Source of the DNA: Macrostomum lignano
Lineage: Eukaryota
Assembly: GCA_002269645.1 (NCBI GenBank)
Contig: NIVC01003429.1
Span: forward strand, 1 to 64,000
Direction: 5' to 3'
Length of the DNA stretch: 64,000 nt
Below, piece after piece: positions 3,001-38,170 of the stretch; within the stretch, counting starts at the first letter, position 1; each line of letters begins with the position of its first letter. Below the pieces are notes generated by a model, which saw only the letters and a program-made list of their open reading frames with translations, was not told the origin of the DNA and ran no database searches. Both the position numbers and the translations under genes were made by a program.

Positions 3001-4084
3001 CTGTCTGGGGCCGTCTCCGTAGGGATAGATGACCTAGCGGCCTTCAAAATAGAGTCGGTGAGGGCTCGGTTGACGCTTTCGATGTGTGTGGGCGCTTGGA
3101 TGTCGATTTGCTTGAGAAGTTCGTCAGATTTTTTGCGGAACGCTGACCAGTCGGCTTTTTTGAAATTGAAACGGCCCCTGCGGGATCGTTGGTGCGGGGG
3201 CGATTTCGTGGAGATCTTGATCCAGATAGGGAGGTGATCTGATCCGACATCGCCCCTGTCTGCCAGGTGGTCCTGCCGGCCAGGTCGGCCGTGGCAAAGG
3301 TGACGTCCGGGGTTGATCGGCCTCCGGTGGCTGGGTTAATGCGAGTGCAGCTGCCGTCGTTGAGCAGAGCCAAGTTCAGGCGGCAGCTCCAGTCGTCTAG
3401 TTTTTGGCCTAGTGTGTCTTTGCGCTGGTGGTGGTCCCAGGCGGTCGCGTGGGCATTGAAGTCGCCTGCCACGATCGAGTTGGGGCCTACCGCAAGGGCC
3501 TCTGGGTTCATGTTTTGCTCGGGGGTGTTGTCCCTGAGGGCTCTAGTGGCCGGCGGCGAGTAGACGTTGATCAGCACGATGGGCTTGCTCGAAGTAGACG
3601 GGTAGATCGAGGTGGAGCTGCAGAAAGTGAGTTGGTCGGCAGGAGATTGGTACGGATTGTTGTGGGGTTCGAAAGGGACATCGTCACGAACGAGCGTGAG
3701 GATGCCCCCTTGGTTCGGCTGTCCGCGGCGTTGGTCCGGGTTCTCGTAGTCGAGGCGGGCTGTGGCGTTGTAGCCTGAGAACTTTGGTGGGCGGGAGCTC
3801 GGTCGCAGGAAAGTTTCTTGAAGAAGGACCGCGTGGGGTTTGAGTCGGTCTAGGGTGGCGGCGAGCTCGGTCGTTCTCGCTCCGAGGCCATTGCAGTTAA
3901 GTTGGAGGATAACAATGTCGGTGGGCTTTTGGGTCAAGTCCGGTTCGGTTCTGTCGGTCTGACTGGTCGTGGTTTTGTCATTGTTGGCGTTAGGGCTCTG
4001 GGCGGCAGTTTGGCGTTGGCGGTGATCGCAGTGTTGGGGCGTCTCGGCCGTGCCTGGTGGGCTGGAGCTGTTCGGCGTGCGGTT

Positions 4085-4234
4085 ACAGGCTTCACAGACC
4101 CAGTTACTACCTTGTCTGGCGAGTCTCCTAATTTCAGTGTTGCTGATGTTAATACAGGCTCCGTGGGACCACGTGCGGCAGCAGGTGCACTCGAGGGCAC
4201 TGACTCTGCCGACGTTTCGTCCGCATGATCCACA
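4085..4234 (-). other. PHD finger (C4HC3) in the retrotransposon polyprotein
   Basis: CGSC-x11-CTCC-x4-H-x2-C-x19(ending WV)-CEAC, directly after the 2A proline. Confidence 0.85.
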
Positions 4235-4243
4235 CGGCCAGGT

Positions 4244-4342
4244 GGGTCCCGGATTGGGCTCGACGTCTCCGGCTCGGAGGACCAGGGACGCGAGGGCCAG
4301 GCAGGTGAGGGCCGGGACCAGGATGGTGAGCGACGTTCTCAT
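4244..4342 (-). other. 2A-like ribosomal skipping (StopGo) peptide at the polyprotein N-terminus
   Basis: ATG at 4342 gives MRTSLTILVPALTCLALASLVLRAGDVEPNPG|P, an exact match to the D(V/I)ExNPG|P consensus with an upstream hydrophobic helix. Confidence 0.85.
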
Positions 4343-4416
4343 GGGCGGAGGCTTCCCCCTGAAGCGGCCGGTAGTGCAGGCCGCAGGTGGCAGTCTCCAA
4401 AAGAGGTGAGTGTGAC

Positions 4417-4484
4417 TAGGACAATTGGCACAGAGGGAGGCCTCTGTGGCGCCGCCCCCACGGGAAGGGTGTCCTATTGACGAC
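4417..4484 (-). ncRNA. HDV-like (CPEB3-type) self-cleaving ribozyme at the retrotransposon 5' end
   Basis: Minus strand reads GUCGUC-AA-UAGGACA-CCC-UUCCCGU-GGG-GGCGGC-G-C-CACAGAGG-CCUC-CCUCUGUG-C-CAAU-UGUCCUA. This gives P1 (6 bp, 2 G-U), P2 (7 bp perfect), P3 (3 bp), L3 UUCCCGU, 1-bp P1.1, P4 (8 bp perfect), and candidate catalytic C at 4428 in J4/2 CCAAU, in nested double-pseudoknot order. Folded by hand. Confidence 0.82.
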
Positions 4485-5142
4485 TGTAGCTCTGCTGCCT
4501 CTGCATCCACCTGTACATTTGAGCTCGTTTTTTAACCTGTAATATGCTCAGTAATAAATACCCTTCTTGAAGTGCGGTCTAGCTGGTTCTGTTTTCGATT
4601 ATTTTGGTGTTAGATTAATGTTCTCTGGGATCTAAATGTGTGAGATCGGTGAGATCTGCAGGTATTAGAGGTGGTGAGATCTCCAGGTGTGAGAGGTGTG
4701 GGATCTGGGGATCTACAGAAAGAAAATGAAAGGTTAACAAGAGCTGCTTGAAATGATTGTCACACCAAAAATTTGGCCCACCTGTGTAAAAAGAAAGAAT
4801 AATCGAGTTGAAGGCTTATTCGTTGTTTTTGTGACACTTTTCTCGAGAGGAATACATGACTAGACTCACACCAATGCTCCTTGCTTTTTTGACACCGTCA
4901 GTTATCACTTTTCATTGACAAACTAATTGTCATGTTGCTTCAGCAATTGCAGGCCAATAGCGTACTTGAGAAAAAGTAGAATTGTTCCGCAAAAACATTT
5001 CTCACCATGCCTGTCTCCATCCACAGCTGATGTGAGAATTGCAGAATCCAATAAGAAACTGCTCACTCCGAGCAGAAATATTCTGCTGACTCTCGCAGGT
5101 CTCAGCATAAATTCTCCTTTGCAGCCTCTGGCCTCAGCAGCG

Positions 5143-13049: not shown

Positions 13050-16000
13050 ATGATCAAGAGTCGGTCAGCCTTCAACATGCCGAGCAACCGGCCTCGCCGT
13101 AGTGAGCTGCTCATGTTTTTATTTTATACTTTTCCTTTGTTGGCTTTGAGTACAGATTGAGTTGCTGCTGAGAGCATAGATGTGGGATAGATAGATGTGG
13201 AGTTGATAGATGTGGGATAGATAGATGTGGGGTAGATCGATGCCGGGAAGATTGATGTGGAGTAAATAGATGTGAAGTAGATAGATGTGGAGTAGATAGA
13301 AGTGAAGTAGATAGATGTGGAGTAGATAGATGTGAAGTAGATAGATGTGGAGTAGATAGCTGTGGAGTAGATAGATGTGGGATAGATAGATGTGGGGTGG
13401 ATAGATGTGGGGTGGATAGATGTGGGATAGATAGATGTGGGATAGATAGATGTGGGGTAGATAGATGTGGGATAGATAGATGTGGGGTAGATAGATGTGG
13501 GATAGATAGATGTGGGATAGATAGATGTGGGGTAGATAGATGTGGGATAGATAGATGTGGGGTAGATAGATGTGGAGTAGATAGATGTGGGGTAGATAGA
13601 TGTGGGGTGGATAGATGTGGGATAGATAGATGTGGGGTAGATAGATGTGGGGTGGATAGATGTGGGATAGATAAATGTGGGGTAGATAGATGTGGGGTAG
13701 AAAATAAGGGGTAGATAGATGTGGGGTGGATAGATGTTGGATAGATAGATGTTTGTAGAGCCGCAATCGACCGGGAAGTTCAGGCAGAAGTTCAGGCAGC
13801 AGTTCATGCAGCAGTTCAGGCAGCAGTTCAGGCAGCAGTTCAGGCAGCAGTTCAGGCAGCAGTTCAGGCAGCAGTTCAGGCAGCAGTTCAGGCAGCAGTT
13901 CAGGCAGCAGTTCAGGCAGCAGTTCAGGCAGCAGTTCAGGCAGCAGTTCAGGCAGCAATTCAGGCAGAAGTTCAGGCAGCAGTTCAGGCAGCAGTTCAGG
14001 CAGAAGTTCAGGTAGCAGTTCAGGCAGCAGTTCAGGCAGCAGTTCAGGCAGCAGTTCAGGCAGCAGTTCAGGCAGCAGTTCAGGCAGCAGTTCAGGCAGA
14101 AGTTCAGGCAGCAGTTCAGGCAGCAGTTCAGGCAGCAGTTCAGGCAGGTTCTTCCCCGCCCTCCCAGTCTGGCTAAACGGAGTCGGAGCTCAGAGCTGCA
14201 GCGGCAAGGAGGCGGAGCTGAGAAAGTCGCTGCCCTACTGCGACGCCGAGACTGGCACCAAGAACCGAGGTGCGACGCCTCATCTCTCTTTGTTGTACTT
14301 TTCCTATCACAGCCTTTGCACTCAGCAGACTGATCTGCACCGCCAATTCTCACCCGCAGTTGTGGAGCGGGACCCCATCGCCGGCCTGGGGCTGCTGGGC
14401 AAGGAGTACGATCCGTTCCTGGAGACTCGGCAGTCCAGCACGCCCAGAACTGCCAGGGACAAAGGTGAGACATGGGGAATCCCGCGAGAGGAAGGAGACT
14501 GAAGTTTTGAGAGTCATGAGAGTCATGCAGAACTGGTGAGAGTCATGCAGAACTGGTGAGAGTCATGCAGAGCCGGTGAGAGTCATGCAGAACCGGTGAG
14601 AGTCATGCAGAACTGGTGAGAGTCATGCAGAGCCGGTGAGAGTCATACAGAGCCAGTGAGAGTCATGCAGAGCCAGTGAGAGTCATGCAGAGCTAATAAG
14701 AGTCATACAGAGCCGGTGAGAGTCATGCAAAGCCAGAAAGAGTTATGCAGAGCCAGAAAGAGTCATACAGAGCCGGTGAGAGTCATGCAGAGTCAGTGAC
14801 AAAACCGGTGAGAGTCATACAGAGCCGGTGAGAGTCATGCAGAGCCGGTGAGAGTCAAGCAGAGCCGGTGAGAGTCATGCAGAGCCGGTGAGAGTCAAGC
14901 AGAGCCGGTCAGAGTCATACAGAGTCAGTGAGAATCATGCATAGCCAGTCGCTGGTGAGAGTCATACAGAGCCAGTGAGAGTCATGCAGAGCCAGAAAGA
15001 GTCATGCAGAACTGGTGAGAGTCATGCAGAGCCGGTGAGAGTCATGCAGAACCGGTGAGAGTCATGCAGAGCCGGTGAGTCATAAAGAGGCAAAAAGAGT
15101 CACGCAGAGCCAGTAAGAGTCATGCAGAGCTAATAAGAGTCATACAGAGCCAGTGAGAGTCAAGCAGAGCCGGTCAGAGTCATACAGAGCCGGTGAGAGT
15201 CATACAGAGCCGGTGAGAGTCATATAGAACCGGTGAGAGTAATACAGAGCCAGTGAGAGTCATATAGAACCGGTGAGAGTCATACAGAGCCGGTGAGAGT
15301 CATATAGAACCGGTGAGAGTCATACAGAGCCAGTGAGAGTCATATAGAACCGGTGAGAGTCAAGCAGAGCCGGTCAGAGTCATACAGAGTCAGTGAGAAT
15401 CATGCATAGCCAGTCGCTGGTGAGAGTCATACAGAGCCAGTGAGAGTCATGCAGAGCCAGAAAGAGTCATGCAGAGCTAATAAGAGTCATACAGAGCCGG
15501 TGAGAGTCATGCAGAGCCAGTGAGAGTCATGCAGAGCCAGTCGCTGGTGAGAGTCATACAGAGCCAGTGAGACTCATGCAGAGCCAGAAAGAGTCATGCA
15601 GAGCTAATAAGAGTCATACAGAGCCGGTGAGAGTCATGCAGAGCCAGTGAGAGTCATGCAGAGCCAGTCGCTGGTGAGAGTCATACAGAGCCAGTGAGAC
15701 TCATGCAGAGCCAGAAAGAGTCATGCAGAGCTAATAAGAGTCATACAGAGCCGGTGAGAGTCATGCAGAGCCAGTGAGAGTCATGCAGAGCCAGTGAGAG
15801 TCATGCAGAGCTAATAAGAGTTATACAGAGCCGGTGAGAGTCATACAGAGCCAGTGAGAGTCATGCAGAGCCAGTGAGAGTCATGCAGAGCTAATAAGAG
15901 TCATACAGAGCCGGTGAGAGTCATGCAAAGCCAGAAAGAGTTATGCAGAGCCAGAAAGAGTCATACAGAGCCAGTGAGAGTCATACAGAGCCGGTGAGAG

Positions 16001-19000
16001 TCATGCAGAGTCAGTGACAAAACCGGTGAGAGTCGTACAGAGCCGGTGAGAGTCATACAGAGCCAGTGAGAGTCATGCAGAGCTAATAAGAGTCATACAG
16101 AGCCGGTGAGAGTCATGTAGAACCGGTGAGAGTCATGCAAAGCCAGAAAGAGTTATGCAGAGCTAATAAGAGTCATACAGAGCCATTGAGTGTCATGCAG
16201 AGCCATAAAGAGTCATGCAGAGCTAATAAGAGTCATATAGAACCGGTGAGAGTCATACAGAGCCGGTGAGAGTCATATAGAACCGGTGAGAGTCATGCAG
16301 AGCCAGAAAGAGTCATGCAGAGCCGGTGAGAGTCAAGCAGAGCCGGTCAGAGTCATATAGAACCGGTGAGAGTCATACAGAGCCGGTGAGAGTCATACAG
16401 AACCGGTGAGAGTCGTACAGAGTCAGTGAGAGTCATGCAGAGCTAATAAGAGTCATATAGAGCCGGTGAGAGTCATGCAGAGCCAGTGACAGAACCGGTG
16501 AGAGTCGTACAGAGCCGGTGAGAGTCATACAGAGCCGGTGAGAGTCATACAGAACCGGTGAGAGTCGTACAGAGTCAGTGAGAGTCATGCAGAGCTAATA
16601 AGAGTCATATTGAGCCGGTGAGAGTCATGCAGAGCCAGTGACAGAACCGGTGAGAGTCGTACAGAGCCGGTGAGAGTCATGCAGAGCCAGTGACAGAACC
16701 GGTGAGAGTCGTACAGAGCCGGTGAGAGTCGTACAGAACCGGTGAGAGTCGTACAGAGCCGGTGAGAGTCATACAGAACCGGTGAGAGTCATACAGAACC
16801 GGTGAGAGTCGTACAGAGTCAGTGAGAGTCATGCAGAGCTAATAAGAGTCATATAGAGCCGGTCAGAGTCATGCAGAGCCATAAAGAGTCAAGCAGAGCC
16901 GGTCAGAGTCATACAGAGCCGGTGAGAGTCATACAGAGTCAGTGAGAGTCATGCAGAGCCAGTGACAGAACCGGTGAGAGTCATACAGAACCGGTGAGAG
17001 TCATGCAGAGCCAGTGAGAGTCATGCAATGACCCGCCCGATTGCAGACTCGCGCAACCCCATCCTGGGGCAGGGCAACCTGGGCCAGGAGGTGAACCTGT
17101 TCAGCCGGTCCGAGGGCTACAAGAGCAGCCGGAAGAGTGAGTCAGCCCCGAATTCTGTGACTCCTATTAATTAAATTAGCAGTAATTAAAACCACTGCAG
17201 TTAATCTGCAGCGCCACTAGAAAACAGGGCGGGGGGTCGGCGGTCTGATCGGAGGGTTGACTTCGGCGGTCCAGGAACAAAGGAGGCCGTGTCCTCAAAC
17301 CGGAGCCGGGGTCCCACCGACCGGCTGGGTGGCCCTCCTTTTGGAGCTGGATATGCGAAACCCGAGCTAGTGGAGGAGATGGAGGGAAAATGAAATGAGA
17401 ATGCAGGGAGAATGAAGGGTGACTGAAGGGGAGAATGAAGGGAGAATGAAGGGAGAATGAAGGAGAATGAAGGGAGAATGCAGGGAGAATGCAGGGAGAA
17501 TGTAGGGAGAATGTAGGGAGAATGCGGGGAGAATGTAGGGAGAATGTAGGGAGAATGCGGGGAGAATGTAGGGAGAATGTAGGGAGAATGTAGGGAGAAT
17601 GTAGGGAGAATGCGGGGAGAATGTAGGGAGAATGTAGGGAGAATGCAGAGAGAATGCAGAGAGAATGCAGAGAGAATGCAGAGAGAATGCAGGGAGAATG
17701 CAGGGAGAATGCAGGGAGAATGCAGGGAGAATGCAGGGAGAATGCAGGGAGAATGCAGGGAGAATGCAGGGAGAATGCAGGGAGAATGCAGGGAGAATGC
17801 AGGGAGAATGCAGGGAGAATGCAGGGAGAATGCAGGGAGAATGCGGGGAGAATGCAGGGAGAATGCAGGGAGAATGCAGGGAGAATGCAGGGAGAATGCA
17901 GGGAGAATGCAGGGAGAATGCAGGGAGAAACTGACTTCAGGTCCCAAGCCTCTCGGCCCCTCGCCGCCTCCCCGCAGGCCGCAACCCGCTGGAGCAGCCT
18001 GAGAACGGCAACTCGGAGGCGGACCGGCTGAGGCCGCGTGGCCGGCCGGGCAAGGCGAGCATCCACCAAGGTGAGCGGCAGTTTCCCAGGCCAGAGCAGC
18101 AGCCACCCCCACAGTGTCCTGGGCCGCACAGTTTGCACAGAGAGCCGCCATTTTAGTGCTTTCTCGGAGCCAGGCCGTGGGACGCCCCACCCCGGGTTTT
18201 TATTATCCAAATTGTTTTGCTTGACTGCCTCGAACTGCGTTTTTTCTGAACAAAAAAGTTAAAATTGCTGGTTTCCTCTGTTGCTTCTTCTAGGGGAGGC
18301 GCGGAACAGAAATGTCTACAGCCTGGGTAATATTTTTACCGCAAAAAAATCAGAATTGAAATGGCACAGGTGGTTGAACTGCTCATTCGGGGCGAGAATT
18401 TATTTTATTTACCAGTGGCAGACTGGGTTTGACCGCTCGGGTGGAAACCCAGGCAGCCTAGGTAGCGGCCTGATTATGCTAATTAGCACTTAAGCAGCCT
18501 GCTATGGCGGTTTGAAAATGCTAATTTCTATCTGGCTTTCCTGCTTATCAGCTGTGAGTCACCGAACAACTTGTGGGCTTCGAACTCGCACAGCCGTGTG
18601 GCTGACAATGAGTTTATTTGAGTTTATTTATTTTCTTAGCGGCGTGAACAATCCTTAGGGCGCCTGAATTTGACACCTCCGGCGGCTTTACCTCCTAATC
18701 ACTAACTGTAGCATCATCTCGTGACTCCCCTGTAGTAGCTCCCATAAACACCTCAGTGTAACGCCTCCCCCACAGTAGCTCCCACCCCAGCCAAAAACAC
18801 CCCAGTGTAACGCCTCCCCCCCACAGTAGCTCCCACCCCAGCCATAAACACCTCAGTGTAACGCCTCCCCCACAGTAGCTCCCACCCAGCCATAAACACC
18901 CCAGTGTAACGCCTCCCCCCCACAGTAGCTCCCACCCCAGCCATAAACACCTCAGTGTAACGCCTCCCCCCACAGTAGCTCCCACCCCAGCCATAAACAC

Positions 19001-22000
19001 CTCAGTGTAACGCCTCCCCCACAGTAGCTCCCCCCAGCCATAAACACCCCAGTGTAACGCCTCCCCCACAGTAGCTCCCACCCCAGCCATAAACACCCCA
19101 GTGTAACGCCTCCCCCACAGTAGCTTCCACCCCAGCCATAAACACCCCAGTGTAACGCCTCCCCCCACAGTAGCTCCCACCCCAGCCATAAACACCCCAG
19201 TGTAACGCCTCCCCCACAGTAGCTCCCACCCCAGCCATAAACACCCCAGTGTAACGCCTCCCCCACAGTAGCTCCCACCCCAGCCATAAACACCCCAGTG
19301 TAACGCCTCCCCCACAGTAGCTCCCACCCTAGCCATAAACACCCCAGTGTAACGCCTCCCCCACAGTAGCTCCCACCCCAGCCATAAACACCCCAGTGTA
19401 ACGCCTCCCCCACAGTAGCTCCCATCCCAGCCATAAACACCCCAGTGTGACGCCTCCCCCACAGTAGCTCCCACCCCAGCCATAAACACCCCAGTGTAAC
19501 GCCTCCCCCACAGTAGCTCCCACCCCAGCCATAAACACCCCAGTGTAACGCCTCCCCCACAGTAGCTCCCACCCCAGCCATAAACACCCCAGTGTGACGC
19601 CTCCCCCCACAGTAGCTCCCACCCCAGCCATAAACACCCCAGTGTGACGCCTCCCCCACAGTAGCTCCCACCCCAGCCATAAACACCCCAGTGTAACGCC
19701 TCCCCCACAGTAGCTCCCACCCCAGCCATAAACACCCTAGTGTAACGCCTCCCCCACAGTAGCTCCCACCCCAGCCATAAACACCCCAGTGTAACGCCTC
19801 CCTCACAGAAGCTCCCACCCCAGCCATAAACACCCCAGTGTGACACCTTCCCCCAAAACCCCTAACCCTAGCTCTAACCCTAACCCTAACCCTTACTCAC
19901 TCCAGCCCAGCGCGACCCGATCTCCGGCCGCGGCGAGTTCGGCCGCGAATGGGACCCGGTGCACAAGTACGCCGGCCGGCCGAGGCCCTGGCATCAGCGC
20001 GCCGTGGACGGTGAGTCTCGGCCATAGACAGGCCAGACACAGGCTTGAAGTGAAAGCTTGGCTCAGAGCCTTCATTGCAGCCTCCAGTGCTGACCTGCAG
20101 CCGAACCATGATTCCCCCCGCATAGATTCCCGCTATTACAAGCTCAGCGAGAGGCCAACAGTTTCAAAGACCGACAAAAAGTACATTCTCGGCTACTACG
20201 GTAGGCGTCCAGCTCTCGCGGTCTCACAACTTGCTCTGGACAGATTAATACTTCTTATCGCTGTTGGGGCAACTGCATGATAGGTTTTCCGAGCTTAACT
20301 CTTTGATGAAGCATTGAAGAGACTAAATTTAACTTTAACTGCATGCTGTTGGATTTCGGACATTTCAACCCGCCTGTCACGGTGCTTGGCCGTATTGTTT
20401 TATTTTTCATTTACAGAAAGCAATAATTTACTTATAGTCCTACTGACTCGCAGGAAAGTAGTAGTGTAGTATGGATATGTAATTGCATAATAAAATCCCG
20501 AATTTAACAGCCAAACGCGGCGGTCGCTGCAACCCGCTGACTGGCGAGGACGCCAAGAGTTTCGACATCAACCAGGAGCTCCGGCGGACTCCGCGCAAAG
20601 GAGTCAGTGAGTGACATTCTGGATTCATGCCCATTTATAACAGTTGTTTTTGGAAGTCATTTTCAAAGCTAGCTACTCAGCAGTAGTTGGACAGTAGTGT
20701 AATGCGCTCACGCCGCCCGACCTGAACTCCGCGCAGAGAAAAGCAACCCGGTCACTGGGGAGAACTGCGACAGCTACACCGTGTCCGACAAGCTGAATGA
20801 GAAGCACGCGAAGTCGGGCAGCAAGACGCCAAGGGGTGAGCAGGGAGGCCTGGCTAAGCTGCCATTTACCACTTCCAGCGATAAAATTATGCTTTTCAAA
20901 GCCAACTTTAACACATATCGGTAGAAGACTGATTATCATACAATTGAACCCTGTGTCAATTCTGTGTCACAATTGGTCAGTCACCTCTAATCTCATTACC
21001 TGTCTTCTCATGCCTAATCTCATTACCTGTCTTTTCATGCCTAATCTCATTACCTGTCTTCTCATGCTTAATATCATTACCTGTCTTCTCATGCCTAATC
21101 TCATTACCTGTCTTTTCATGCCTAATCTCATTACCTGTCTTTTCATGCCTAATCTCATTACCTGTCTTCTCATGCTTAATATCATTACCTGTCTTCTCAT
21201 GCCTAATCTCATTACCTGTCTTTTCATGCCTAATCTCATTACCTGTCTTCTCATGCTTAATATCATTACCTGTCTTCTCATGCCTAATCTCATTACCTGT
21301 CTTCTCATGCCTAATCTCATTACCTGTCTTCTCATCCCTGATCTCATTACCTGTCTTCTCATCCCTGATCTCATTACCTGTCTTCTCATCCCTGATCCCA
21401 TTACCTGTCCTCATTCTCATTACCTCATCAATGTAATCTTATCACCCAAGGCTCAGGCGGCAACCCGGTCACCGGGGAGAACTGCAAGTCCTTCGACTTC
21501 AACATCGAGTCGAAGTCGAAGTCGGCCGGCAGCTCGCCCAGAAAGAGCGGCAGCGGCGGCAACCCTGTCACTGGAGAGAACTGCGCTGTGTACGCCTACA
21601 GCAGCGAGTTCAAGGCCAAGCCCAACAAGCCGAACGGTGAGTGTGGGATCTGAGCATCAAAATGGGGATCTGAGCATTAAAATGGGGATCTGAGCATCAA
21701 AATGGGGATCTGAGCATTAAAATGGGGATCTGAGCATCAAAATGGGGATCTGAGCATTAAAATGGGGATCTGAGCATCAAAATGGGGATCTGAGCATCAA
21801 AATGGGGATCTGAGCATCAAAATGTACATCAAAGCATCAAAGCATCTGAGTACATCTGAGCATCAAAATGGGGATCTGAACATCAAAATGGGGATCTGAG
21901 CATCAAAATAAGGATCTGAACATCGAAATGGGGATCTGAACATCAAATGGGGATCTGAACATCAAAATGGGGATCCGAGCATTAAAATGGGGATCTGAAC

Positions 22001-25000
22001 ATCAAAATGGGGATCCGAGCATTAAAATGGGGATCTGAACATCAAAATGGGGATCCGAGCATTAAAATGGGGATCTGAACATCGAAATGGGGATCTGAAC
22101 ATCAAAATGGGGATCTGAACATCGAAATGCGGATCTGAACATCAAAATGGGGACCTGAGCATTAAAATGGGGATCTGAGCATCAAAATAAGGATCTGAAC
22201 ATCGAAATGGGGATCTGAACATCGAAATGGGGATCTGAACATCGAAATGGGGATCTGAACATCAAATGGGGATCTGAACATCAAAATGGGGATCCGAGCA
22301 TTAAAATGGGGATCTAAGCATTAAAATGGGGATCTGAACATCAAAATGGGGATCTGAACATCAAAATGGGGATCTGATGAGAGTCTGAGCATCAAATGGG
22401 GATCTGAGCATTAAAATGGGGATCTGAGCATTAAACTGGGGATCTGAACATCAAAATGGGGATCCGAGCATTAAACTGGGGATCTGAACATCAAAATGGG
22501 GATCCGAGCATTAAAAAGGGGATCTGAACATCGAAATGGGGATCTGAACATCAAAATGGGGATCTGAACATCAAAATGGGGATCTGAACATCGAAATGCG
22601 GATCTGAACATCAAAATGGGGACCTGAGCATTAAAATGGGGATCTGAGCATCAAAATAAGGATCTGAACATCGAAATGGGGATCTGAACATCGAAATGGG
22701 GATCTGAACATCAAATGGGGATCTGAACATCAAAATGGGGATCCGAGCATTAAAATGGGGATCTAAGCATTAAAATGGGGATCTGAACATCAAAATGGGG
22801 ATCTGATGAGAGTCTGAGCATCAAATGGGGATCTGAGCATTAAAATGGGGATCTGAGCATTAAACTGGGGATCTGAACATCAAAATGGGGGTCTGAGCAT
22901 CAAAATAAGGATCTGAACATCGAAATGGGGATCTGAACATCAAATGGGGATCTGAACATCAAAATGGGGATCCGAGCATTAAAATGGGGATCTGAACATC
23001 GAAATGGGGATCTGAACATCAAAATGGGGATCTGAACATCAAAATGGGGATCTGAACATCAAAATGGGGATCTGAACATCAAATGGGGATCTGAACATCA
23101 AAATGGGGATCCGAGCATTAAAATGGGGATCTGAACATCAAAATGGGGATCCGAGCATTAAAATGGGGATCTGAACATCGAAATGGGGATCTGAACATCA
23201 AAATGGGAATCTGAACATCAAAATGGGGATCTGAACATCGAAATGCAGATCTGAACATCAAAATGGGGACCTGAGCATTAAAATGGGGATCTGAACATCA
23301 AAATGGGGATCCGAGCATTAAAATGGGGATCTAAGCATTAAAATGGGGATCTGAACATCAAAATGGAGATCTGAACATCAAAATGGGGATCTGATGAGAG
23401 TCTGAGCATCAAATGGGGATCTGAGCATTAAAATGGGGATCTGAGCATTAAACTGGGGATCTGAACATCAAAATGGGGGTCTGAGCATCAAAATGGGGAT
23501 CTGAGCATTAAAATGGGATCTGAGCATTAAAATGGGGATCTGAGCATCAAAATGGGTATTTGAACACTCAGATGAGAATCTGAGCATTGCCAAGAGCTCC
23601 CGTGGCTGAGCAGCTTGTTGTCAATGAGTTCCCCGCCAGACAGTCACAACTCCCGGCTGCTTGCAGAGCGCAAGAATCCCCTGACAGGGGAGAACGTGAG
23701 CAGCTTCGTGCTGAAGCTGACGGAGCGGGCCGACCAGCCGAAACCCGCGGCGCCTCACAGCCCGAGTATGACCGCCTGCGGCTGACCCGCCTTCCACTTC
23801 CCCAGCACCGACCCCGCCATCTTGCAGAGTGCATGAGATCTCTATTGGAAATTGGTTTATCGAATGCTTAACCTTCTTCCCCCCCCCTGATCAACCCGAT
23901 CTGAGGATTGCATACTATTTGAGTTCATTTCATGGCGACCTTGGGAGGCAGTTTACTTTAAAGTCTTGCATGAACCCTTCGTTGAAGCGGAACTGCTTGT
24001 TTTGTTAAAAAGAAAACTTTTAATGCGGTTTTTGGTTTCTCTATTTGCATGACTAGTTGAGATTGATTTTCATCGAAATTCAGGTGTGTTAAACAGTACT
24101 AAAGGATTTTTCATGAAAAGTTTTTCGTAAGAAACCGTCATTTTTAAGAAATCGTCATTTCCAAGAAACCGTCATTTCTAAGAAACCTTCCTTTCTAAGA
24201 AACCGTCTTTTCTAAGAAACCTTCCTTTCTAAGAAACCGTCATTTCCAAGAAACCGTCATTTCTAAGAAATTGTCCTTTCTAAAAAATCCTGATTTCTAA
24301 GAAACCGTCATTTCTAAGAAATCGTCATTTCTAAGAAACCGTCATTTTCAATAAACTGTAATTACTAGGAAATCTTTTACTCAAAGAAATCATCGTTTCT
24401 AAGAAGTTTGTTTACGAAAAAAATATTTATTTCTAAGAAAGCTATTTCTATGATATCGTTCTTTCCAAGATTTCGATGAAATTGTTAATTTCTTTTGTTT
24501 TTTCTGAGAAACAGTTATTTAGCAATTGATACAACATGATGCATGAATACTTTTGCGACTTTAAAAGTGAAATTTAAGGCTTCACTCCGCATGCGGCAAT
24601 GGATATTTCCTTCATCCCCACAATTACTGTCCCCCTATTATCCCCATCGCACGCTGTCCGGCTCGAACTCAGGCGAGGCCAAGAACCCGCTCACCGGGGC
24701 CAACTGCCCGAGCTTCTCCGTCAACCAGGAGGAGAGGCCAAGGACCGCCCCCAGCGCGCTCGCAACTCGTGAGTGCCCAGATTTGCACTTTTGCACAGAT
24801 CGCAGGCGCACTATCTGCACCTCTGTCACACTGCATCAAGCAGGGAGACTGGAAAGGGACAGTATCGATGCGGTCAGACCTCGTAACCACTGTCACAGTC
24901 TATCACATGCTGTCACACCCTATCACATACTGTCACGTGCTGCCACAGCCTATCACATTCTGTCAGATGCTGTCACACTCTATCACATGCTATCACATGC

Positions 25001-27330
25001 TGTCACATGCTGTGACACCCTATCACATGCTGTCACACTCTATCACTTGCTGTCACACTCTATCACATGCTGTCACACTCTATCAAATGCTGTCACACTC
25101 TATCAAATGCTGTCACACTCTATCACATGCTATCACATGCTGTCACATGCTGTGACACCCTATCACATGCTGTCACACTCTATCACATGCTGTGACACCC
25201 TATCACATGCTGTGACACCCTGTCACATGCTGTCACAAATAATCGCATGCTATCACATCCTGGAGTACTCTGTCACACCCTGTTGCACCCTGTCACAAAC
25301 GCCTCAAATCCCAATCACCGGTCCCACAGCCCGCGCCAGCTCCAACCCGGTGACAGGCGAAGGCTGCCGCCACTACGTGGTGTGCACCGGTGAGAAGAAG
25401 CTCTCGGCCAGCCCGCAGACGCCCAGAGAGGCGGGCGGCAACCCGCTGACTGGCAGCAACGTCCGCTGCTTCGACATCAACCAGGAGATGCGGATCAACA
25501 GGCGGGGCAATGAGAGTGAGGCTCGAATTAATACCACTGATAAGCAATGGGTCTCACAATAATCTCACTGATAAGCAATGGGTCTCACAATAATCTAACT
25601 GATAAGCAATGGGTCTCACAATAATCTCACTGATAAGCAATGGGTCTCACAATAATCTCACTGATAAGCAATGGGTCTCACAATAATCTAACTGATAGGC
25701 AATGGGTCTCACAATAATCTCACTGATAAGCAATGGGTCTCACAATAATCTCACTGATAAGCAATGGGTCTCACAATAATCTCACTGATAAGCAATGGGT
25801 CTCACAATAATCTCACTGATAAGCAATGGGTCTCACAATAATCTCACTGATAAGCAATGGGTCTCACAATAATCTCACTGATAAGCAATGGGTCTCACAA
25901 TAATCTCACTGATAAGCAATTGGTCTCACAATAATCTCACTGATAAGCAATGGGTCTCACAATAATCTCACTGATAATCCCCAAAAACCCGCAGGCGCCA
26001 GGCCCGCAGAGAACGGCCACCACCAGACCAACGGAGTGGCCTGCGATGCGGCCGTCATGTCCGGTGAGAAATCGAGATGGGAGGCTGGAAGATGAAGGGA
26101 GGATCGTGCGGTGGAAAGGATGGTGTGAGAGGGAGTTGTTTGAGCGGGGAGAGTGGTGTGAGAGGGGAGAGTGGTGTGAATGGGGAGAGTGGTGTGAGAG
26201 GGGAGAGTGGTGTGAGAGGGGAGAGTGGTGTGAGAGAGGAGAGTGGTGTGAGGGAGAGTGGTGTGAGGGAGAGTGGTGTGAGAGAGGAGAGTGGTGTGAG
26301 GGAGAGTGGTGTGAGGGAGAGTGGTGTGAGAGGGGAGAGTGGTGTGAGGGAGAGCGGTGTGAGAGGGGAGAGTGGTGTGAGGGAGAGTGGTGTGAGAGGG
26401 GAGAGTGGTGTGAGGGAGAGCGGTGTGAGAGGGGAGAGTGGTGTGAGGGAGAGTGGTGTGAGGGAGAGTGGTGTGAGGGAGAGTGGTGTGAGAGGGAAGA
26501 GTGGTGTGAGAGGGGAGAGTGGTGTGAGAGGGAGTGGTGTGAGAGGGGAGAGTGGTGGGAGAAGGGAGAGTGGTGTGAGAGGGAGTTGTTTGAACGGGGA
26601 GAGTGGTGTGAGAGGGGAGAGTGGTGTGAGGGAGAGCGGTGTGAGAGGGAGTTGTTTGAACGGGGAGAGTGGTGTGAGGGAGAGTGGTGTGAGAGGGGAG
26701 AGTGGTGTGAGAGGGGAGAATGGTGTGAGAGGGAGTGGTGTGAGAGGGGAGAGTTATGTGAGGGAGAGTGGTGTGAGAGGGAGTGGTGTGAGGGAGAGTG
26801 GTGTGAGAGGGGAGAGTGGTGTGAGGGAGAGTGGTGTGAGAGGGGAGAGTGGTGTGAGAGGGGAGAGTGGTGTGAGAGGAGAGTGGTGTGAGAGGGAGAG
26901 TGGTGTGAGGGAGAGTGGTGTGAGAGGGGAGAGTGGTGTGAGGGGAGAGTGGTGTGAGAGGGGAGAGTGGTGTGAATGGGGAGAGTAGTGTGAGAGGGGA
27001 GAGTAGTGTGAATGGGGAGAGTGGTGTGAGAGGGGAGAGTGGTGTGAATGGGAAGAGTGGTGTGAGAGGGGAGAGTGGTGTGAATGGGAAGAGTGGTGTG
27101 AGAGGGGAGAGTGGTGTGAATGGGAAGAGTGGTGTGAGAGGGAGTGCTGTGAGAGGGAGAGTAGTGTGAGGGAGGGTGGTGTGAGAGGGAGAGTAGTGTG
27201 AGGGAGGTTGGTGTGAGAGGGAGAGTAGTGTGAGAGGGGAGAGTGGTGTCAGGGGAGAGTGCTATGAGAAGTGTCTATGGCCAATCTTCGCCCCTCTGCA
27301 GCCAGAAGCAACCCGATCACCGGGATGTGA
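13050..27330 (+). CDS. 14-exon gene encoding a 466-aa protein built of [N/D]P[I/L/V]xG (NPxTG) repeats; function unknown
   Basis: Hand-built exons: 13050-13101, 14168-14269, 14360-14464, 17047-17136, 17978-18070, 19906-20010, 20511-20606, 20737-20835, 21457-21636, 23667-23765, 24673-24768, 25330-25515, 25995-26063, 27302-27330. Total 1401 nt, no internal stop. Start is in a gccgccATG Kozak context. All introns are GT-AG and phase 1, and every internal exon is a multiple of 3 with GC3-rich codons. The protein ends ARSNPITGM*. Confidence 0.88.
13176..13752. repeat. 15-nt minisatellite, ~38 copies (intron 1 of NPxTG gene)
   Basis: Unit gatagatgtggg(g/a)ta. Confidence 0.96.
13775..14147. repeat. 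12-nt minisatellite, ~31 copies (intron 1)
   Basis: Unit gcagttcaggca. Confidence 0.97.
14508..17026. repeat. 20-nt minisatellite, ~125 copies with higher-order blocks (intron 3)
   Basis: Unit gagagtcat(g/a)cagagccggt. Confidence 0.97.
17390..17929. repeat. 11-nt minisatellite, ~48 copies (intron 4)
   Basis: Unit gggagaatgca. Confidence 0.97.
18735..19843. repeat. 49-nt minisatellite, ~22 copies (intron 5)
   Basis: Unit cccagtgtaacgcctcccccacagtagctcccaccccagccataaacac. Confidence 0.97.
20987..21425. repeat. 27-nt minisatellite, ~16 copies (intron 8)
   Basis: Unit ctaatctcattacctgtcttctcatgc. Confidence 0.96.
21645..23556. repeat. 20-nt minisatellite, ~95 copies with higher-order blocks (intron 9)
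   Basis: Unit gatctga(g/a)cat(c/t)aaaatggg. Confidence 0.97.
24125..24350. repeat. 17-nt AT-rich minisatellite, ~13 degenerate copies (intron 10)
   Basis: Unit ttctaagaaaccgtcat. Confidence 0.9.
24890..25240. repeat. ~20-nt minisatellite built on 10-nt halves (intron 11)
   Basis: Unit tgtcacactctatcacatgc. Confidence 0.92.
25535..25977. repeat. 31-nt minisatellite, ~14 copies (intron 12)
   Basis: Unit cactgataagcaatgggtctcacaataatct. Confidence 0.97.
26120..27265. repeat. 15/18-nt purine-rich minisatellite (intron 13)
   Basis: Units gagagtggtgtgagg and gagagtggtgtgagaggg interspersed. Confidence 0.95.
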
Positions 27331-28369
27331 GCGACAGACCACCGCTACAAGCTGCTCCTGAAAAATTCCCTGGCCCTGAGCCTTGGAGACGTGCGGTTGC
27401 TACTGCTGCATCAAGTCCTTGCTGAACCCTGAGCCACTGAACCAGACCTGAATTCCCCCAGCCCTCCTTCCTCTCTTTCTGATCCTCTCTCCGTTTGGTC
27501 ATATTTTATTGTCATTAATGAACTCCGTGTCTGTTTTCCCTTTTGTTTACACGCGTTCTGCACTCGGTCTCCCTGCTGTGCACTTTAGTGTAAAAGTACA
27601 TATCAACCGATACTAAAAGTACAGCCCACTAAAGGTGCTTTACTGCCAGCCAATCAAATCAGCTGCTCCCGTATTTCCTATTCGGTGACTTGCTTCAGTT
27701 TTGTTGTACTTTTATCCAGCCGCCGCACTTTTACTTGTTGAACCGCCCCCAGCAGTGCTTTGCTTTCTCTTGCTTTTTGTTTGCTTTTTGGAAGGAATTT
27801 TTCCTTGCCTTGCTGCCTCTCCGTTCCTCGGTTTGGTTGAAGACAAAACTTTTTCGCTCATTGATTTTCGTAAAGTTTTTATTGCGGTGGATAATTAGGG
27901 ATTTGAAGTGAGAAAGCTGCTCACCTGCCGCTGTTAACCAAGGATTTCCCTGCAACTATTTACTCTTGATTTTAACATTTTAAAATTTTAACATCAAATT
28001 TAATGAAATTTACATTGCTTTTTTCTCCAACCTACTTTATATAGTACTCGCAGTAGTAAATTAAATATTATAGAATGCAATTTTTTGGCGCTGTTTTAAA
28101 TTTAACTAATAGTGAATTCTATTTAGACCTTCTGCTGTGCCAGCATGTTTATTAATATCCAATAACCCTGCTTTCAGTCCCAATAAAAATAAACACAGAG
28201 AAACGCTTCTATCAGCTGTAATAACTTCTGGCCCGCGTGTCTCAGTCTTTGTTAGCATAGAAATATTGCGGCAAAGTCTGATGCTGAGGGGCATCTCAAT
28301 GGGATTGGAGAGACATTTACTAACAGATATTTGAGAGAAATTTGATTGAAATTCGAGAGACTCCCCTGT

Positions 28370-36933: not shown

Positions 36934-37574
36934 GCTAGCTGTGTGAAGCCTCACTATTTTATTCTGCATGCTGGAATTCGCAGCACTGAACCTGATGAGG
37001 CGCCCTCATCAGCTCATTGCAGCCTCATCGGAGCCGCTGGACCGTGAGAAATATCGGGTGGATTAAGACCCTCGTCGGGCCTTCCATCTCTTTGCATCGA
37101 AAAAATCTAAAAAAATGAAAGATTTTTCACGATTTCTGAATCCGCAGCCCGAGCGAGAAGCAAAATGATGACTATGATTTTGTGAGAAAATTTAATCTTC
37201 CTGAGAGAGGGGAAGAGTTGGGGGAGAATTCTCCCCTCCATCTCTTTCAGTTGCAAAATTTCGGGCCTTCGCAAGTCGAAAAAGGCGATTCAATTTGAAG
37301 TGTCGGAGCGGCCGGGAGATAAAGAGGGAAGTTGAGGCCGGTGGTGGGGAGCAGATTATGCAAATCTCCCCACTCCGGACAATTTTCCCCTTTATTCGGC
37401 CGGGACACACGGGGCCCGCTAAAATTTAATTTCTTAAAAGGGGGTTGCGGCTTTAAAAAAGATCGATTTTCCGCTGCGAGGGAGTTTGGTCAGCCTCATC
37501 ACCGAGTTTTGCTGCGAGCTGCTGGGCCTCTCTGTGCTCCGTGCTCTCCCTGTGCCTGACATTCCAGGTCTCAC

Positions 37575-38170
37575 CCGCCTCCCGTGTCTTACCCTCCTGT
37601 GTCATAAACTCCCGTGTCTTACCCTCCCGTGTCTTACCCTCCCATGTTACCCTCCCGTGTCTTACCCTCCCGTGTTACCCTCCCGTGTCTTAAACTCCCG
37701 TGTCTTACCCTCCCGTGTCTTAATCTCCCGTGTCTTACCCTCATGTGTCTTACCCTCCCGTATTTTACCTTCCCGAGTCTTACCCTCCTGTGTATATCCT
37801 CCCATGTTTTACCCTTCCGCGTCTTACCCTCCCGTGTCTTACCCTCCTCCCGTGTCTTACCCTCCTGTCGTGTCTTACCCTCCCTTTTCTTACCTTCCCG
37901 TTTCTTACCCTCCTGTGTCTTACCCTCCTCCCGTGTCTTACCCTCCTGTCGTGTCTTACCCTCCCTTTTCTTACCTTCCCGTGTCTTACCCTCCCGTGTC
38001 TTACCCTCCCTTGTTTTACCCTCCCATGTCTTACCCTCCCTTGTCTTACCCTCCCGTATTTTACCTTCCCGTGTCTTACCCTCGCGTGTCTTACCCTCAC
38101 GTGTATTACCTTCCTCCCGTGTCTTACCCTCCCGTGTCTTACCCTCCTCCCGTGTCTTACCCTCGTGCGT
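37575..38170. repeat. 15-nt degenerate minisatellite
   Basis: Unit cttaccctcccgtgt. Confidence 0.93.

What the first reader, a model, noticed from the sequence alone, without database searches (positions are those of the whole stretch)
13050..27330. Hidden 466-aa protein made of 13 NPxTG-type repeats
Seen: splicing 14 small exons yields repeats RDPIAG, RNPILG, RNPLEQ, RDPISG, CNPLTG, SNPVTG, GNPVTG x2, KNPLTG x2, SNPVTG, GNPLTG and terminal SNPITGM*. Many are followed by E/A/S-N-C/V-x-x-F/Y and a basic Ser/Pro-rich linker with TPR/SPR proline-directed kinase-type sites. No globular domain is evident, and the ORF track misses the gene entirely. Inference: a largely disordered multivalent short-linear-motif protein. 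From memory, NPVTG-like motifs occur in invertebrate Jupiter-type microtubule-associated proteins and some ciliary proteins, but the PPGG motifs typical of Jupiter/HN1 are absent, so this may be an undescribed repeat family.
Basis: partly seen in the sequence, partly recalled or inferred. Interest (0 to 1): 0.75.

Follow-up and report, generated by a model that had tools for sequence, protein, structure and literature searches.

The report
Flatworm Jupiter-like NPxTG repeat protein
This is a real, spliced 14-exon gene of the flatworm Macrostomum lignano that encodes a basic, disordered protein with 13 copies of an NPxTG-type motif; the family is conserved in flatworms and ribbon worms, has never been studied, and probably binds microtubules like the insect protein Jupiter, though nobody has tested that.

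Summary
Thirteen [N/D]P[ILV]x[G/Q] motifs lie on the + strand between 14371 and 27310. None lie on the - strand, and a shuffled protein gives about 0.07.

They join through 14 GT-AG exons (13050-27330). All internal exons are phase 1-1 and mostly carry one repeat each. The product is 468 aa, or 466 aa with a NAGNAG alternative acceptor.

It is 467/468 identical to GenBank 'hypothetical protein BOX15_Mlig011212g1' of Macrostomum lignano. The gene is therefore already predicted, but unnamed and unstudied.

Orthologues occur across flatworms, often misnamed 'Surface protein PspC', and in nemerteans. Repeat order is conserved, and so is exon structure in the one case checked (Echinococcus). An exhaustive profile search found nothing credible elsewhere.

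No Pfam or PDB sequence relative was found. The AlphaFold2 model is disordered (mean pLDDT 41.5). The calculated pI is 9.8.

Real dipteran Jupiter proteins carry invariant RNPITGLGL and GNPVTGEGY motifs, in the same order and spacing as the two repeat types here. One nemertean orthologue keeps a Jupiter-type N-terminal PPGG motif.

However, profile-profile similarity is weak (P = 0.002) and no flatworm member has PPGG or MASNIF. This is best read as an expanded, divergent Jupiter/JPT-like multivalent microtubule binder. That function is inferred, not shown.

The parts
13050..13101 (+). Exon 1: start codon, MIKSRSAFNMPSNRPRR; donor A|gtgagc, ends in phase 1
   Evidence: 100% match to P0001 residues 1-17
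14168..14269 (+). Exon 2: conserved N-terminal region IWLNGVGAQSCSGKEAELRKSLPYCDAETGTKNR. It holds the only predicted helix, residues 29-38
14360..14464 (+). Exon 3: repeat 1, type A (RDPIAGLGLLGKEYDPF). R55-D-P-I-x-G-L-G is invariant in 17 flatworm sequences
17047..17136 (+). Exon 4: repeat 2, type A (RNPILGQGNLGQEVNLF)
17978..18070 (+). Exon 5: repeat 3, degenerate type A (RNPLEQPENGNSEADRL). R118-N-P is invariant in the family
19906..20010 (+). Exon 6: repeat 4, type A (RDPISGRGEFGREWDPVHKYAGR), the best conserved block of the family
20511..20606 (+). Exon 7: repeat 5, type B (CNPLTGEDAKSFDINQELRR)
20737..20835 (+). Exon 8: repeat 6, type B (SNPVTGENCDSYTVS)
21451..21636 (+). Exon 9: repeats 7 and 8, type B (GNPVTGENCKSFDFN, GNPVTGENCAVYAYS). 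A tandem NAGNAG acceptor (21451 or 21457) gives 468 or 466 aa. The Echinococcus orthologue has an equivalent double-repeat exon
23667..23765 (+). Exon 10: repeat 9, type B (KNPLTGENVSSFVLK)
24673..24768 (+). Exon 11: repeat 10, type B (KNPLTGANCPSFSVNQEER)
25330..25515 (+). Exon 12: repeats 11 and 12, type B (SNPVTGEGCRHY, GNPLTGSNVRCFDINQEMR). This second double-repeat exon is also conserved in Echinococcus
25995..26063 (+). Exon 13: motif-free linker ARPAENGHHQTNGVACDAAVMS
27302..27330 (+). Exon 14: repeat 13 at the extreme C-terminus (ARSNPITGM) plus the TGA stop. Parasite orthologues end in YNI[IL]TG

Best explanation
The locus is an expressed-type, intron-rich gene of Macrostomum lignano. 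It encodes a 468-aa basic, intrinsically disordered protein.

Architecture. A short conserved N-terminal segment is followed by four 'type A' modules (R[DN]PIxGxGxFGxExDP). Then come nine 'type B' modules (NP[LVI]TGEN[CV]x[ST][FY]xVxxExK/R), spaced about 28-34 residues apart. The last one sits at the very C-terminus.

Origin. The array arose by duplication of symmetric phase 1-1 exons. It was already fixed in the common ancestor of flatworms, and in looser form in the flatworm-nemertean ancestor.

Proposed mechanism (inferred, not shown). Each module is a short turn or hairpin-forming linear motif. It belongs to the same grammar as the PPGGxxSxxF microtubule-binding motifs of Jupiter/JPT1/JPT2, sharing a PxxGxxxxx[F/Y] skeleton. 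The protein would then be a multivalent microtubule-associated protein that binds successive tubulin subunits along a protofilament or inside the lumen and stabilises or marks microtubules. The basic Ser/Pro-rich linkers with [ST]P sites would allow regulation by phosphorylation. It looks like a lineage-specific, greatly expanded and divergent relative of the Jupiter/JPT family rather than a canonical member.
For: Shown here:
- Gene model and motif count.
- 467/468 identity to GenBank PAA68543.1.
- Exons differ from the GenBank copy at 6/1407 nt with 1 aa change, against 2-3% divergence in unique flanking and intronic DNA.
- Full-length orthologues in macrostomids, cestodes and trematodes, with every repeat positionally conserved.
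- Matching exon boundaries in Echinococcus, including both double-repeat exons.
- Nemertean homologues: hhalign probability 98.4%, E 4.6e-15.
- Disorder: pLDDT 41.5. The few residues above 50 fall mostly on the N-terminal segment and several motif cores.
- pI 9.8 and GRAVY -1.06.

Link to Jupiter:
- Thirteen real dipteran Jupiter long isoforms have invariant RNPITGLGL, then GNPVTGEGY 27-28 aa later.
- HMMs built only from flatworm and nemertean repeats pick exactly these two sites. Type A scores 12 bits (p about 1e-5) and type B 10 bits (p about 2e-5), in the same A-then-B order.
- hhalign aligns the region LRKSLPYCDAET..RDPIAGLGLLG with Jupiter KEPLGLCPNE..RNPITGLGLNG (P = 0.0022).
- Lineus longissimus orthologue P0044 starts with RVLNPPGGRVSINLFG, aligned to Jupiter RVLRPPGGGSSDIFG.
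- Like Jupiter/JPT, the family ends with a motif copy at the extreme C-terminus.

From the literature:
- The PPGGK*S / PPGGxxSxxF repeats are the microtubule-binding elements of JPT2 and Jupiter, and JPT2 is disordered and basic (PMC12773733; PMC12803092).
Against: - There are no experimental data for any member of the family.
- Pfam JUPITER (PF17054) does not match the window protein, its paralogues or the nemertean proteins, even at E <= 1-10.
- Profile-profile similarity to Jupiter covers only 34 columns, at probability 12.8%.
- No flatworm member has PPGG or a MASNIF-like motif.
- The PPGG bridge rests on one nemertean RefSeq model that could be a fused gene prediction. I could not retrieve its locus.
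- Jupiter was chosen for comparison because of the remembered motif, so the motif p-values are not from an unbiased screen.
- 'NPLTGE' also occurs by chance or convergence in bacterial G5 domains. So a 6-residue match alone proves nothing.
- In Jupiter, the tested microtubule-binding element is PPGG. The NPxTG motifs themselves have not been assayed.
Confidence: 0.5

Rival explanations
1. A lineage-specific disordered scaffold whose NPxTG/RDPIxG motifs bind some partner other than tubulin. Candidates include a repeat-domain adaptor, a nuclear or RNA-associated factor, or a condensate-forming protein. On this reading the resemblance to Jupiter is convergent.
For: Homology to Jupiter is statistically weak. 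PPGG and MASNIF are absent. The same short motif arises independently in bacterial G5 domains. The basic, S/R/G/P-rich composition would also suit nuclear or RNA-binding disordered proteins. JPT2 itself has non-microtubule roles, in NAADP binding and phase separation (PMC12803092).
Against: Two different motif types co-occur in Jupiter in the same order and spacing. A nemertean orthologue has a Jupiter-type N-terminus. Both families place a motif copy at the extreme C-terminus. No alternative partner is suggested by any known motif class that I could match.
Confidence: 0.33
2. A specialised axonemal or centriolar microtubule inner protein of cilia, sperm or flame cells, rather than a general cytoplasmic MAP.
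For: Extended repeat proteins with a periodicity that could match tubulin are typical of inner proteins (background knowledge, not tested here). JPT2 has been reported inside the microtubule lumen (PMC12773733). Flatworms and nemerteans are both richly ciliated.
Against: Profile searches of all PDB chain sequences (which, to my knowledge, include axonemal doublet proteins from cryo-EM maps) gave no hit at E <= 10. The exhaustive profile search found no homologue in other ciliated phyla. The gene is retained in adult-stage parasites whose tegument lacks cilia, although they keep sperm and flame cells. No expression data could be found.
Confidence: 0.12
3. A surface or secreted 'PspC-like' protein, as the database names of the parasite orthologues suggest.
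For: Many orthologues are named 'Surface protein PspC'. Cestode members give marginal hits of 27-29 bits over 17-18 residues to Pfam TagH_SH3-like. NPxTG is a sortase B signal in bacteria.
Against: It is a spliced eukaryotic gene. The N-terminus is basic rather than hydrophobic, so there is no signal peptide, and I saw no hydrophobic (membrane-spanning) stretch when reading the sequence (GRAVY -1.06). The window protein does not hit the Pfam model. The only PDB similarity is the 7-8 residue string KNPLTGE in G5 domains, at E 0.07-0.4. The name is a propagated artefact of a short motif.
Confidence: 0.01
4. Not a functional gene: either a chance pattern in minisatellite-rich DNA or a decaying pseudogene copy.
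For: About 76% of the intron sequence is minisatellite. M. lignano carries several near-identical copies of the gene.
Against: The 1407-nt frame across 14 GT-AG exons is intact. Exons are about five times more conserved than neighbouring unique DNA. Protein and exon structure are conserved with cestodes and trematodes.
Confidence: 0.01

Closest known systems
Drosophila microtubule-associated protein Jupiter (long isoforms) and the vertebrate homologues JPT1/HN1 and JPT2/HN1L (Pfam PF17054 JUPITER)
   Same: - Basic, intrinsically disordered protein built from short repeated Pro/Gly turn motifs separated by Ser/Pro-rich linkers.
- Jupiter carries RNPITGLGL (like type A) and GNPVTGEGY (like type B), in the same order and about 28 aa apart.
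- A motif copy sits at the extreme C-terminus in both.
- The PxxGxxxxx[F/Y] skeleton is shared between PPGGxxSxxF and NPLTGENxxSF.
- A nemertean orthologue keeps the RVLxPPGG N-terminal motif.
   Different: - No PPGG and no MASNIF motif in any flatworm member.
- No match to PF17054.
- hhalign probability of only 12.8%.
- 13 NPxTG-type copies rather than 2.
- About 2-3 times longer than JPT1/2.
- It has a conserved LPxxDxETGxKNR N-terminal block.
- Microtubule binding is untested.
Unnamed flatworm/nemertean family: 'Surface protein PspC' of Echinococcus, Fasciola and Schistosoma; Smp_150640; Tubulanus LOC141906064; Lineus LOC135494118
   Same: This is the family the window gene belongs to. There is full-length similarity at 34-39% identity to the parasite orthologues, with every repeat positionally conserved, and exon boundaries match in Echinococcus.
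   Different: M. lignano has several paralogues and copies. Parasite proteins often replace P by A, T, I or V in the motif (NAITG, NTVTG, NILTG). Nemertean proteins have more type A and fewer type B modules. A second flatworm paralogue family (P0034, P0038, P0041) has type A modules plus a long acidic or Pro-rich tail.
Tau/MAP2/MAP4 microtubule-binding repeats (PGGG motif, 31-32 aa period)
   Same: An analogy only. Both are disordered MAPs in which a Pro/Gly turn motif recurs about every 30 residues, flanked by phosphorylatable Ser/Pro-rich basic sequence. PMC12773733 draws the same PGGG/PPGG parallel.
   Different: No sequence similarity was detected: no Pfam tubulin-binding repeat hit and no PDB hit. 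The motif chemistry differs (Asn-Pro-x-Thr-Gly-Glu-Asn).
Bacterial G5 domains (Aap/SasG), TagH SH3-like domain and sortase B NPxTG signals
   Same: They share the literal string NP[LV]TGE.
   Different: Those are folded extracellular beta domains or cell-wall sorting signals of Gram-positive bacteria. The similarity is limited to 7-18 residues at E of at least 0.07. The source organism, gene structure and cellular location are all unrelated. This coincidence is the likely origin of the misnomer.

Membership tests
Jupiter/JPT (HN1) family, Pfam PF17054 | Match to the family profile (PF17054) above threshold | tested here: not met
   hmmscan gave 0 families at E <= 1 for the window protein and for M. 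lignano, cestode, schistosome and nemertean relatives at E <= 1-10. All dipteran Jupiter proteins carry PF17054.
Jupiter/JPT (HN1) family, Pfam PF17054 | Repeated PPGGxxSxxF / PPGGK*S motifs (N-terminal RVLRPPGG and C-terminal NPPGG) | tested here: not met
   There is no PPGG or PGGG in the window protein or in any of the 25 flatworm members checked. Among the six nemertean sequences checked, only Lineus P0044 has one, at residue 40. The motif definition comes from PMC12773733 and PMC12803092.
Jupiter/JPT (HN1) family, Pfam PF17054 | MASNIF motif | tested here: not met
   A regex scan found no SN[IL]F or ASNxF motif in the window protein or its orthologues. The motif is described in PMC12803092 and is visible in A2.
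Jupiter/JPT (HN1) family, Pfam PF17054 | Significant profile-profile similarity to a Jupiter alignment | tested here: inconclusive
   hhalign A1 vs A2: 34 columns, P = 0.0022, probability 12.8%. Nemertean P0044 vs A2: 28 columns over the PPGG motif, P = 0.012.
Jupiter/JPT (HN1) family, Pfam PF17054 | C-terminal RNPITGLG and GNPVTGEGY motifs of insect Jupiter long isoforms | tested here: met
   Both are invariant in 13 dipteran sequences. They are the top hits of the flatworm type A and type B repeat HMMs, at 12 and 10 bits, in the same order and about 28 aa apart. Window equivalents are RDPIAGLGLLG and SNPVTGEGCRHY.
Jupiter/JPT (HN1) family, Pfam PF17054 | Basic, intrinsically disordered protein | tested here: met
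   pI 9.8 and GRAVY -1.06. AlphaFold2 mean pLDDT 41.5, with no residue at or above 70.
Jupiter/JPT (HN1) family, Pfam PF17054 | Direct binding to microtubules | not testable with these tools
   This needs co-sedimentation or imaging. No complex prediction tool was available.
Flatworm/nemertean NPxTG-repeat family (unnamed; 'PspC' misnomer) | Full-length homology with conserved order of type A then type B repeats and the LPxxDxETGxKNR N-terminal block | tested here: met
   E-values from 1e-35 to 1e-47 to cestode and trematode proteins. The 17-sequence alignment has 53 invariant columns centred on the motifs. Nemertean P0044 vs A1 gives probability 98.4%.
Flatworm/nemertean NPxTG-repeat family (unnamed; 'PspC' misnomer) | One-repeat-per-exon gene structure with two double-repeat exons | tested here: met
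   Window exons are listed. The mapped Echinococcus multilocularis exons have corresponding boundaries, with double-repeat exons of 189 and 198 nt against 186 and 186 nt here.
Bacterial surface protein PspC / G5 / TagH SH3-like | Match to the bacterial domain models, a signal peptide, and a cell-wall anchor or choline-binding region | tested here: not met
   The window protein has no Pfam hit. PDB hits are limited to the 7-8 residue KNPLTGE string at E >= 0.07. It is a spliced eukaryotic gene with a basic, non-hydrophobic N-terminus.
Tau/MAP2/MAP4 tubulin-binding repeat (PF00418) | Match to the repeat profile, or the PGGG motif | tested here: not met
   No Pfam hit and no PGGG. This is an analogy of architecture only.

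The most novel reading that the evidence does not exclude
NPxTG/RDPIxG modules would be a previously unrecognised class of tubulin-binding short linear motif, evolutionarily continuous with the PPGGxxSxxF motif of Jupiter/JPT. Flatworms and nemerteans would have replaced the small canonical JPT protein with a 13-valent 'ruler-like' MAP that lines protofilaments or the lumen. This would be a clade-specific microtubule regulator present in all major parasitic flatworms.
Probability: 0.3. Interest if true: 0.65.

Novelty: new variant of a known kind. Interest (0 to 1): 0.45.

Why it matters
If the inference holds, this family shows how a two- to four-motif disordered MAP (Jupiter/JPT) can be remodelled by exon duplication into a 13-valent protein. 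It would also extend the recognised microtubule-binding motif grammar from PPGG to NPxTG.

That would make the conserved but unassayed NPITG and NPVTG motifs of Drosophila Jupiter directly testable.

The family is confined to flatworms and nemerteans. It is conserved in schistosomes, liver flukes and tapeworms, whose microtubules are the target of benzimidazole drugs. A lineage-specific microtubule regulator would therefore be of practical interest to parasitologists.

There is also an annotation gain: the widespread label 'Surface protein PspC' on the parasite orthologues is wrong and should be replaced.

If the protein does not bind microtubules, it remains an ordinary uncharacterised disordered protein with an unusually tidy repeat-per-exon architecture.

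Tried and rejected
- Pfam scans of the window protein and 12 relatives found nothing except marginal TagH_SH3-like hits in cestodes and a non-significant Cds6_C match (E 0.26) in one paralogue, both rejected as short-motif or chance artefacts.
- PDB sequence searches with the protein, the family profile A1 and a 22-column type B profile A4 gave only chance G5-domain and phospholipase-inhibitor hits.
- An exhaustive profile search of 1.84 billion representatives found only flatworm and nemertean proteins, plus two evident chance hits (a spirochaete DUF4215 protein and a metagenomic protein with VNPLTGE repeats).
- A third large search with a broader profile (A3) at E <= 10 returned only flatworm proteins. 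A first attempt failed on a parameter limit.
- UniRef names of relatives (MBD, EZH1, SH2, Shugoshin_C, CLASP_N, histone acetyltransferase and others) are mutually inconsistent. I treated them as unreliable. For that reason the two 'Jupiter' names were not counted as evidence.
- Literature searches returned nothing functional. I searched NPxTG-type strings, Macrostomum + Jupiter, PspC + flatworm, Smp_055220, Smp_150640 and the Mlig gene ids. Smp_055220, 'surface protein PspC' in PMC3820750, could not be tied to this family. The S. mansoni cluster member is Smp_150640.
- The Lineus P0044 locus could not be retrieved to check that its PPGG exon belongs to the same gene.
- A structure-library search (fold search) was not run, because a model with pLDDT 41.5 would give meaningless matches.
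- The possible relic of the N-terminal RVLRPPGG motif in M. lignano (RRIWLNGVGAQS) is too weak to use.
Full report

A six-frame scan of the whole window for [ND]P[ILVM][TSAEL][GQ] found 13 matches on the + strand between 14371 and 27310. There were none on the - strand and one weak match elsewhere, at 38392.

Each motif lies in a short open segment bounded by a good acceptor (polypyrimidine tract plus AG) and a GTGAG-type donor. Joining them gives an uninterrupted frame.

Using the best database relative as a guide, I located the three motif-free exons. The final model has 14 exons:
- 13050-13101
- 14168-14269
- 14360-14464
- 17047-17136
- 17978-18070
- 19906-20010
- 20511-20606
- 20737-20835
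- 21451-21636
- 23667-23765
- 24673-24768
- 25330-25515
- 25995-26063
- 27302-27330

All introns are GT-AG. All twelve internal exons have lengths divisible by three and are in phase 1-1.

The product is 468 aa.

In the protein, the 13 motifs are 28-51 residues apart (median 33). Twenty thousand shuffles of the protein give a mean of 0.07 motifs and never more than 3.

**2. What organism, and is the gene 'hidden'?**

The protein is 467/468 identical to GenBank PAA68543.1, 'hypothetical protein BOX15_Mlig011212g1' of the free-living flatworm Macrostomum lignano.

The window is collinear with that record's contig, NIVC01001389.1. Identity is 97-98% in unique DNA. Intron lengths differ wherever minisatellites differ in copy number; intron 3, for example, is 2582 bp here against 848 bp there.

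Exons differ at only 6 of 1407 nt, with one amino-acid change. That is several-fold less than in the surrounding unique DNA and is consistent with purifying selection.

So the gene is missed only by a prokaryote-style ORF list. It is already predicted in public data, but it has no name, no Pfam family and no literature.

**3. The family**

Homologues fall into four groups:
- several M. lignano paralogues and copies;
- single full-length orthologues in cestodes (Echinococcus, Taenia, Hymenolepis, Mesocestoides, Spirometra) and trematodes (Schistosoma including Smp_150640, Fasciola, Clonorchis, Paragonimus and others);
- a second flatworm paralogue family rich in RDPIxG modules;
- nemertean proteins (Tubulanus LOC141906064 and Lineus LOC135494118).

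An exhaustive HMMER profile search of 1.84 billion representative proteins returned only 51 hits at E <= 1e-3. Those I looked up were flatworm or nemertean, apart from two evident chance hits in bacterial or metagenomic repeat proteins. Most of the rest are short fragments whose source I did not check.

In a 17-sequence flatworm alignment, each of the repeats is positionally conserved. The 53 invariant columns centre on the motif cores: R-D-P-I-x-G-L-G, R-N-P, R-D-P-I-x-G-x-G-x-F-G-x-E-W-D-P, and N-x-x-T-G. Even the extreme C-terminus is conserved, as SNPITGM or YNI[IL]TG.

The Echinococcus multilocularis gene has corresponding exon boundaries, including the two exons that carry two repeats each. 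The array and its exon-per-repeat structure therefore predate the split between macrostomids and parasitic flatworms.

Symmetric phase 1-1 exons, each starting 2-6 codons before the motif, are the expected signature of growth by exon duplication.

**4. Two module types**
- Type A (repeats 1-4) has the consensus VQRDPITGLGDLGEEYDPLR.
- Type B (repeats 5-13) has the consensus RNPLTGENCKTYDVSPEER. It is followed by a basic Ser/Pro-rich linker.

Parasite orthologues often substitute the Pro (NAITG, NTVTG, NILTG). The constant core is therefore N-x-[ILV]-T-G-E-N.

**5. Physical nature**

Pfam finds no domain. PDB sequence and profile searches find nothing.

AlphaFold2, run with the family alignment, gives mean pLDDT 41.5 and pTM 0.14, with no residue at or above 70. 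It predicts one short helix in the conserved N-terminal block. The few residues above pLDDT 50 fall mostly on that N-terminal segment and on several motif cores. Some of those cores show isolated low-confidence beta-bridges, hinting at a small turn or hairpin.

The protein is basic (pI 9.8) and hydrophilic (GRAVY -1.06). Ser, Gly, Arg, Pro and Asn together make up 46% of residues. 'Largely disordered multivalent short-motif protein' is a fair description.

**6. Relation to Jupiter/JPT**

I used a remembered Drosophila Jupiter sequence only as a search seed. That search retrieved real database sequences, the best being 93% identical to the seed.

In 13 dipteran long isoforms, the C-terminal part contains three invariant elements in order: RNPITGLGL.GDG, then GNPVTGEGY 27-28 residues later, then the terminal NRIPPGG[FY]SSGLW.

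HMMs built solely from flatworm and nemertean repeats pick exactly these sites. Type A finds RNPITGLGL at 12 bits (per-sequence p about 1e-5). Type B finds GNPVTGEGYK at 10 bits (p about 2e-5). The order (A before B) and the spacing match the flatworm protein.

hhalign of the flatworm alignment against the Jupiter alignment aligns 34 columns around the first repeat. The aligned stretches are LRKSLPYCDAET...RDPIAGLGLLG and KEPLGLCPNE...RNPITGLGLNG. The result is only P = 0.0022 and probability 12.8%.

The Lineus orthologue is securely homologous to the flatworm family (probability 98.4%). It begins with RVLNPPGGRVSINLFG, which aligns to Jupiter's RVLRPPGGGSSDIFG (P = 0.012).

The literature defines the JPT motif as PPGGxxSxxF / PPGGK*S and shows that it mediates microtubule binding of JPT2 and Jupiter. 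One study places JPT2 in the microtubule lumen, with an AlphaFold3 model at the taxane pocket (PMC12773733; PMC12803092).

Type B modules share the skeleton P-x-x-G-x-x-x-x-x-[F/Y] with that motif. Compare NPLTGENVSSF with NPPGGKSSISF. Eight of the nine type B copies in the window protein fit N-x-x-x-G-x5-[FY].

Against membership:
- No flatworm member has PPGG, PGGG or MASNIF.
- PF17054 is not matched.
- The statistics are weak.
- Jupiter was picked a priori, so the motif p-values are not from an unbiased screen.
- The PPGG bridge is a single gene model that I could not inspect.

My reading is that this is a divergent, expanded relative or analogue of Jupiter/JPT. It should not be filed as a canonical member.

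**7. Most likely mechanism**

The mechanism is inferred. The protein would be a multivalent microtubule-associated protein in which each roughly 33-residue module places one turn motif on successive tubulin subunits.

The period resembles the 31-32 residue repeats of tau/MAP2/MAP4. That is an analogy from established knowledge, not a tested similarity.

The basic linkers would contribute electrostatic affinity. Eight [ST]P sites, two of them full [ST]Px[KR], offer phospho-regulation.

I put this at about 0.5. The main rival is a motif scaffold for a different, unknown partner, at about 0.33. A dedicated axonemal inner protein is a sub-variant at about 0.12. Surface or 'PspC' protein, and artefact or pseudogene, are each at about 0.01 or less.

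**8. The 'PspC' name**

NPxTG is known in the literature only as a sortase B sorting signal. The string KNPLTGE occurs in staphylococcal G5 domains of Aap/SasG. Cestode orthologues marginally touch the TagH SH3-like Pfam model over 17-18 residues.

These short coincidences most likely seeded the propagated label 'Surface protein PspC'. Nothing else about the protein supports that label.

**9. Verdict**
- Observation: confirmed.
- Novelty: a new variant of a known kind. It is an uncharacterised, clade-restricted, repeat-expanded Jupiter-like disordered protein that already exists in databases as a hypothetical protein.
- Interest: moderate, 0.45. It offers a clean, testable hypothesis about a new tubulin-binding motif grammar and a parasite-relevant lineage-specific protein, but there are no functional data and only motif-level links to the known family.

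Noticed in passing
window 13176-27269 (introns 1, 3, 4, 5, 8, 9, 10, 11, 12 and 13 of the gene): Ten of the 13 introns contain their own distinct minisatellite (introns 2, 6 and 7 have none), with units of 11-49 bp and up to 127 copies. Together these make up about 76% of intron sequence. Several arrays start or stop within 10-35 nt of a splice site. Their copy numbers differ between this window and GenBank NIVC01001389.1, so intron lengths differ by up to 1.7 kb while exons are nearly identical.
   Followed up: partly
window 21451 / 21457: A tandem NAGNAG acceptor (cccaAG|GCTCAG|GCGG) sits at exon 9.
   Followed up: yes
window 20125-20199 and 27337-27429: An older UniRef/WormBase-type model (P0002) includes an extra peptide, DSRYYKLSERPTVSKTDKKYILGYY, from intron 6. 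It also has an alternative C-terminus, DHRYKLLLKNSLALSLGDVRLLLLHQVLAEP, read just past the stop in another frame. These are either minor isoforms or mispredictions. Neither is conserved in other species.
   Followed up: partly
window about 317-4510, - strand: Long ORFs here carry an endonuclease/exonuclease/phosphatase domain (E 2e-13), a PHD finger and a partial reverse transcriptase. This is a non-LTR (LINE-type) retrotransposon upstream of the gene.
   Followed up: partly
P0034, P0038, P0041, P0057, P0037, P0046 (proteins, not in the window): There is a second flatworm paralogue family. It shares the LPYVDxxTGxKNR N-terminal block and RDPIxGxGDFG modules, but it replaces the type B array with [RT]DPITH motifs and, in the three longest members, a long Pro/Glu/Lys-rich tail. 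It is also uncharacterised.
   Followed up: no
UniRef names of relatives: Members of this one family carry mutually incompatible automatic names: MBD, EZH1 methyltransferase, SH2, Shugoshin_C, Ig-like, CLASP_N, histone acetyltransferase, protein kinase, Surface protein PspC and Jupiter. This is a clear case of annotation noise on disordered repeat proteins.
   Followed up: partly
window 37486-38418 and other long ORFs inside tandem arrays (for example 13124-14473 -, 18695-19846 -, 25950-26891 +): Many of the longest 'ORFs' in the window are simply open frames through minisatellites, such as the Extensin-like low-complexity hit. They are not genes.
   Followed up: partly
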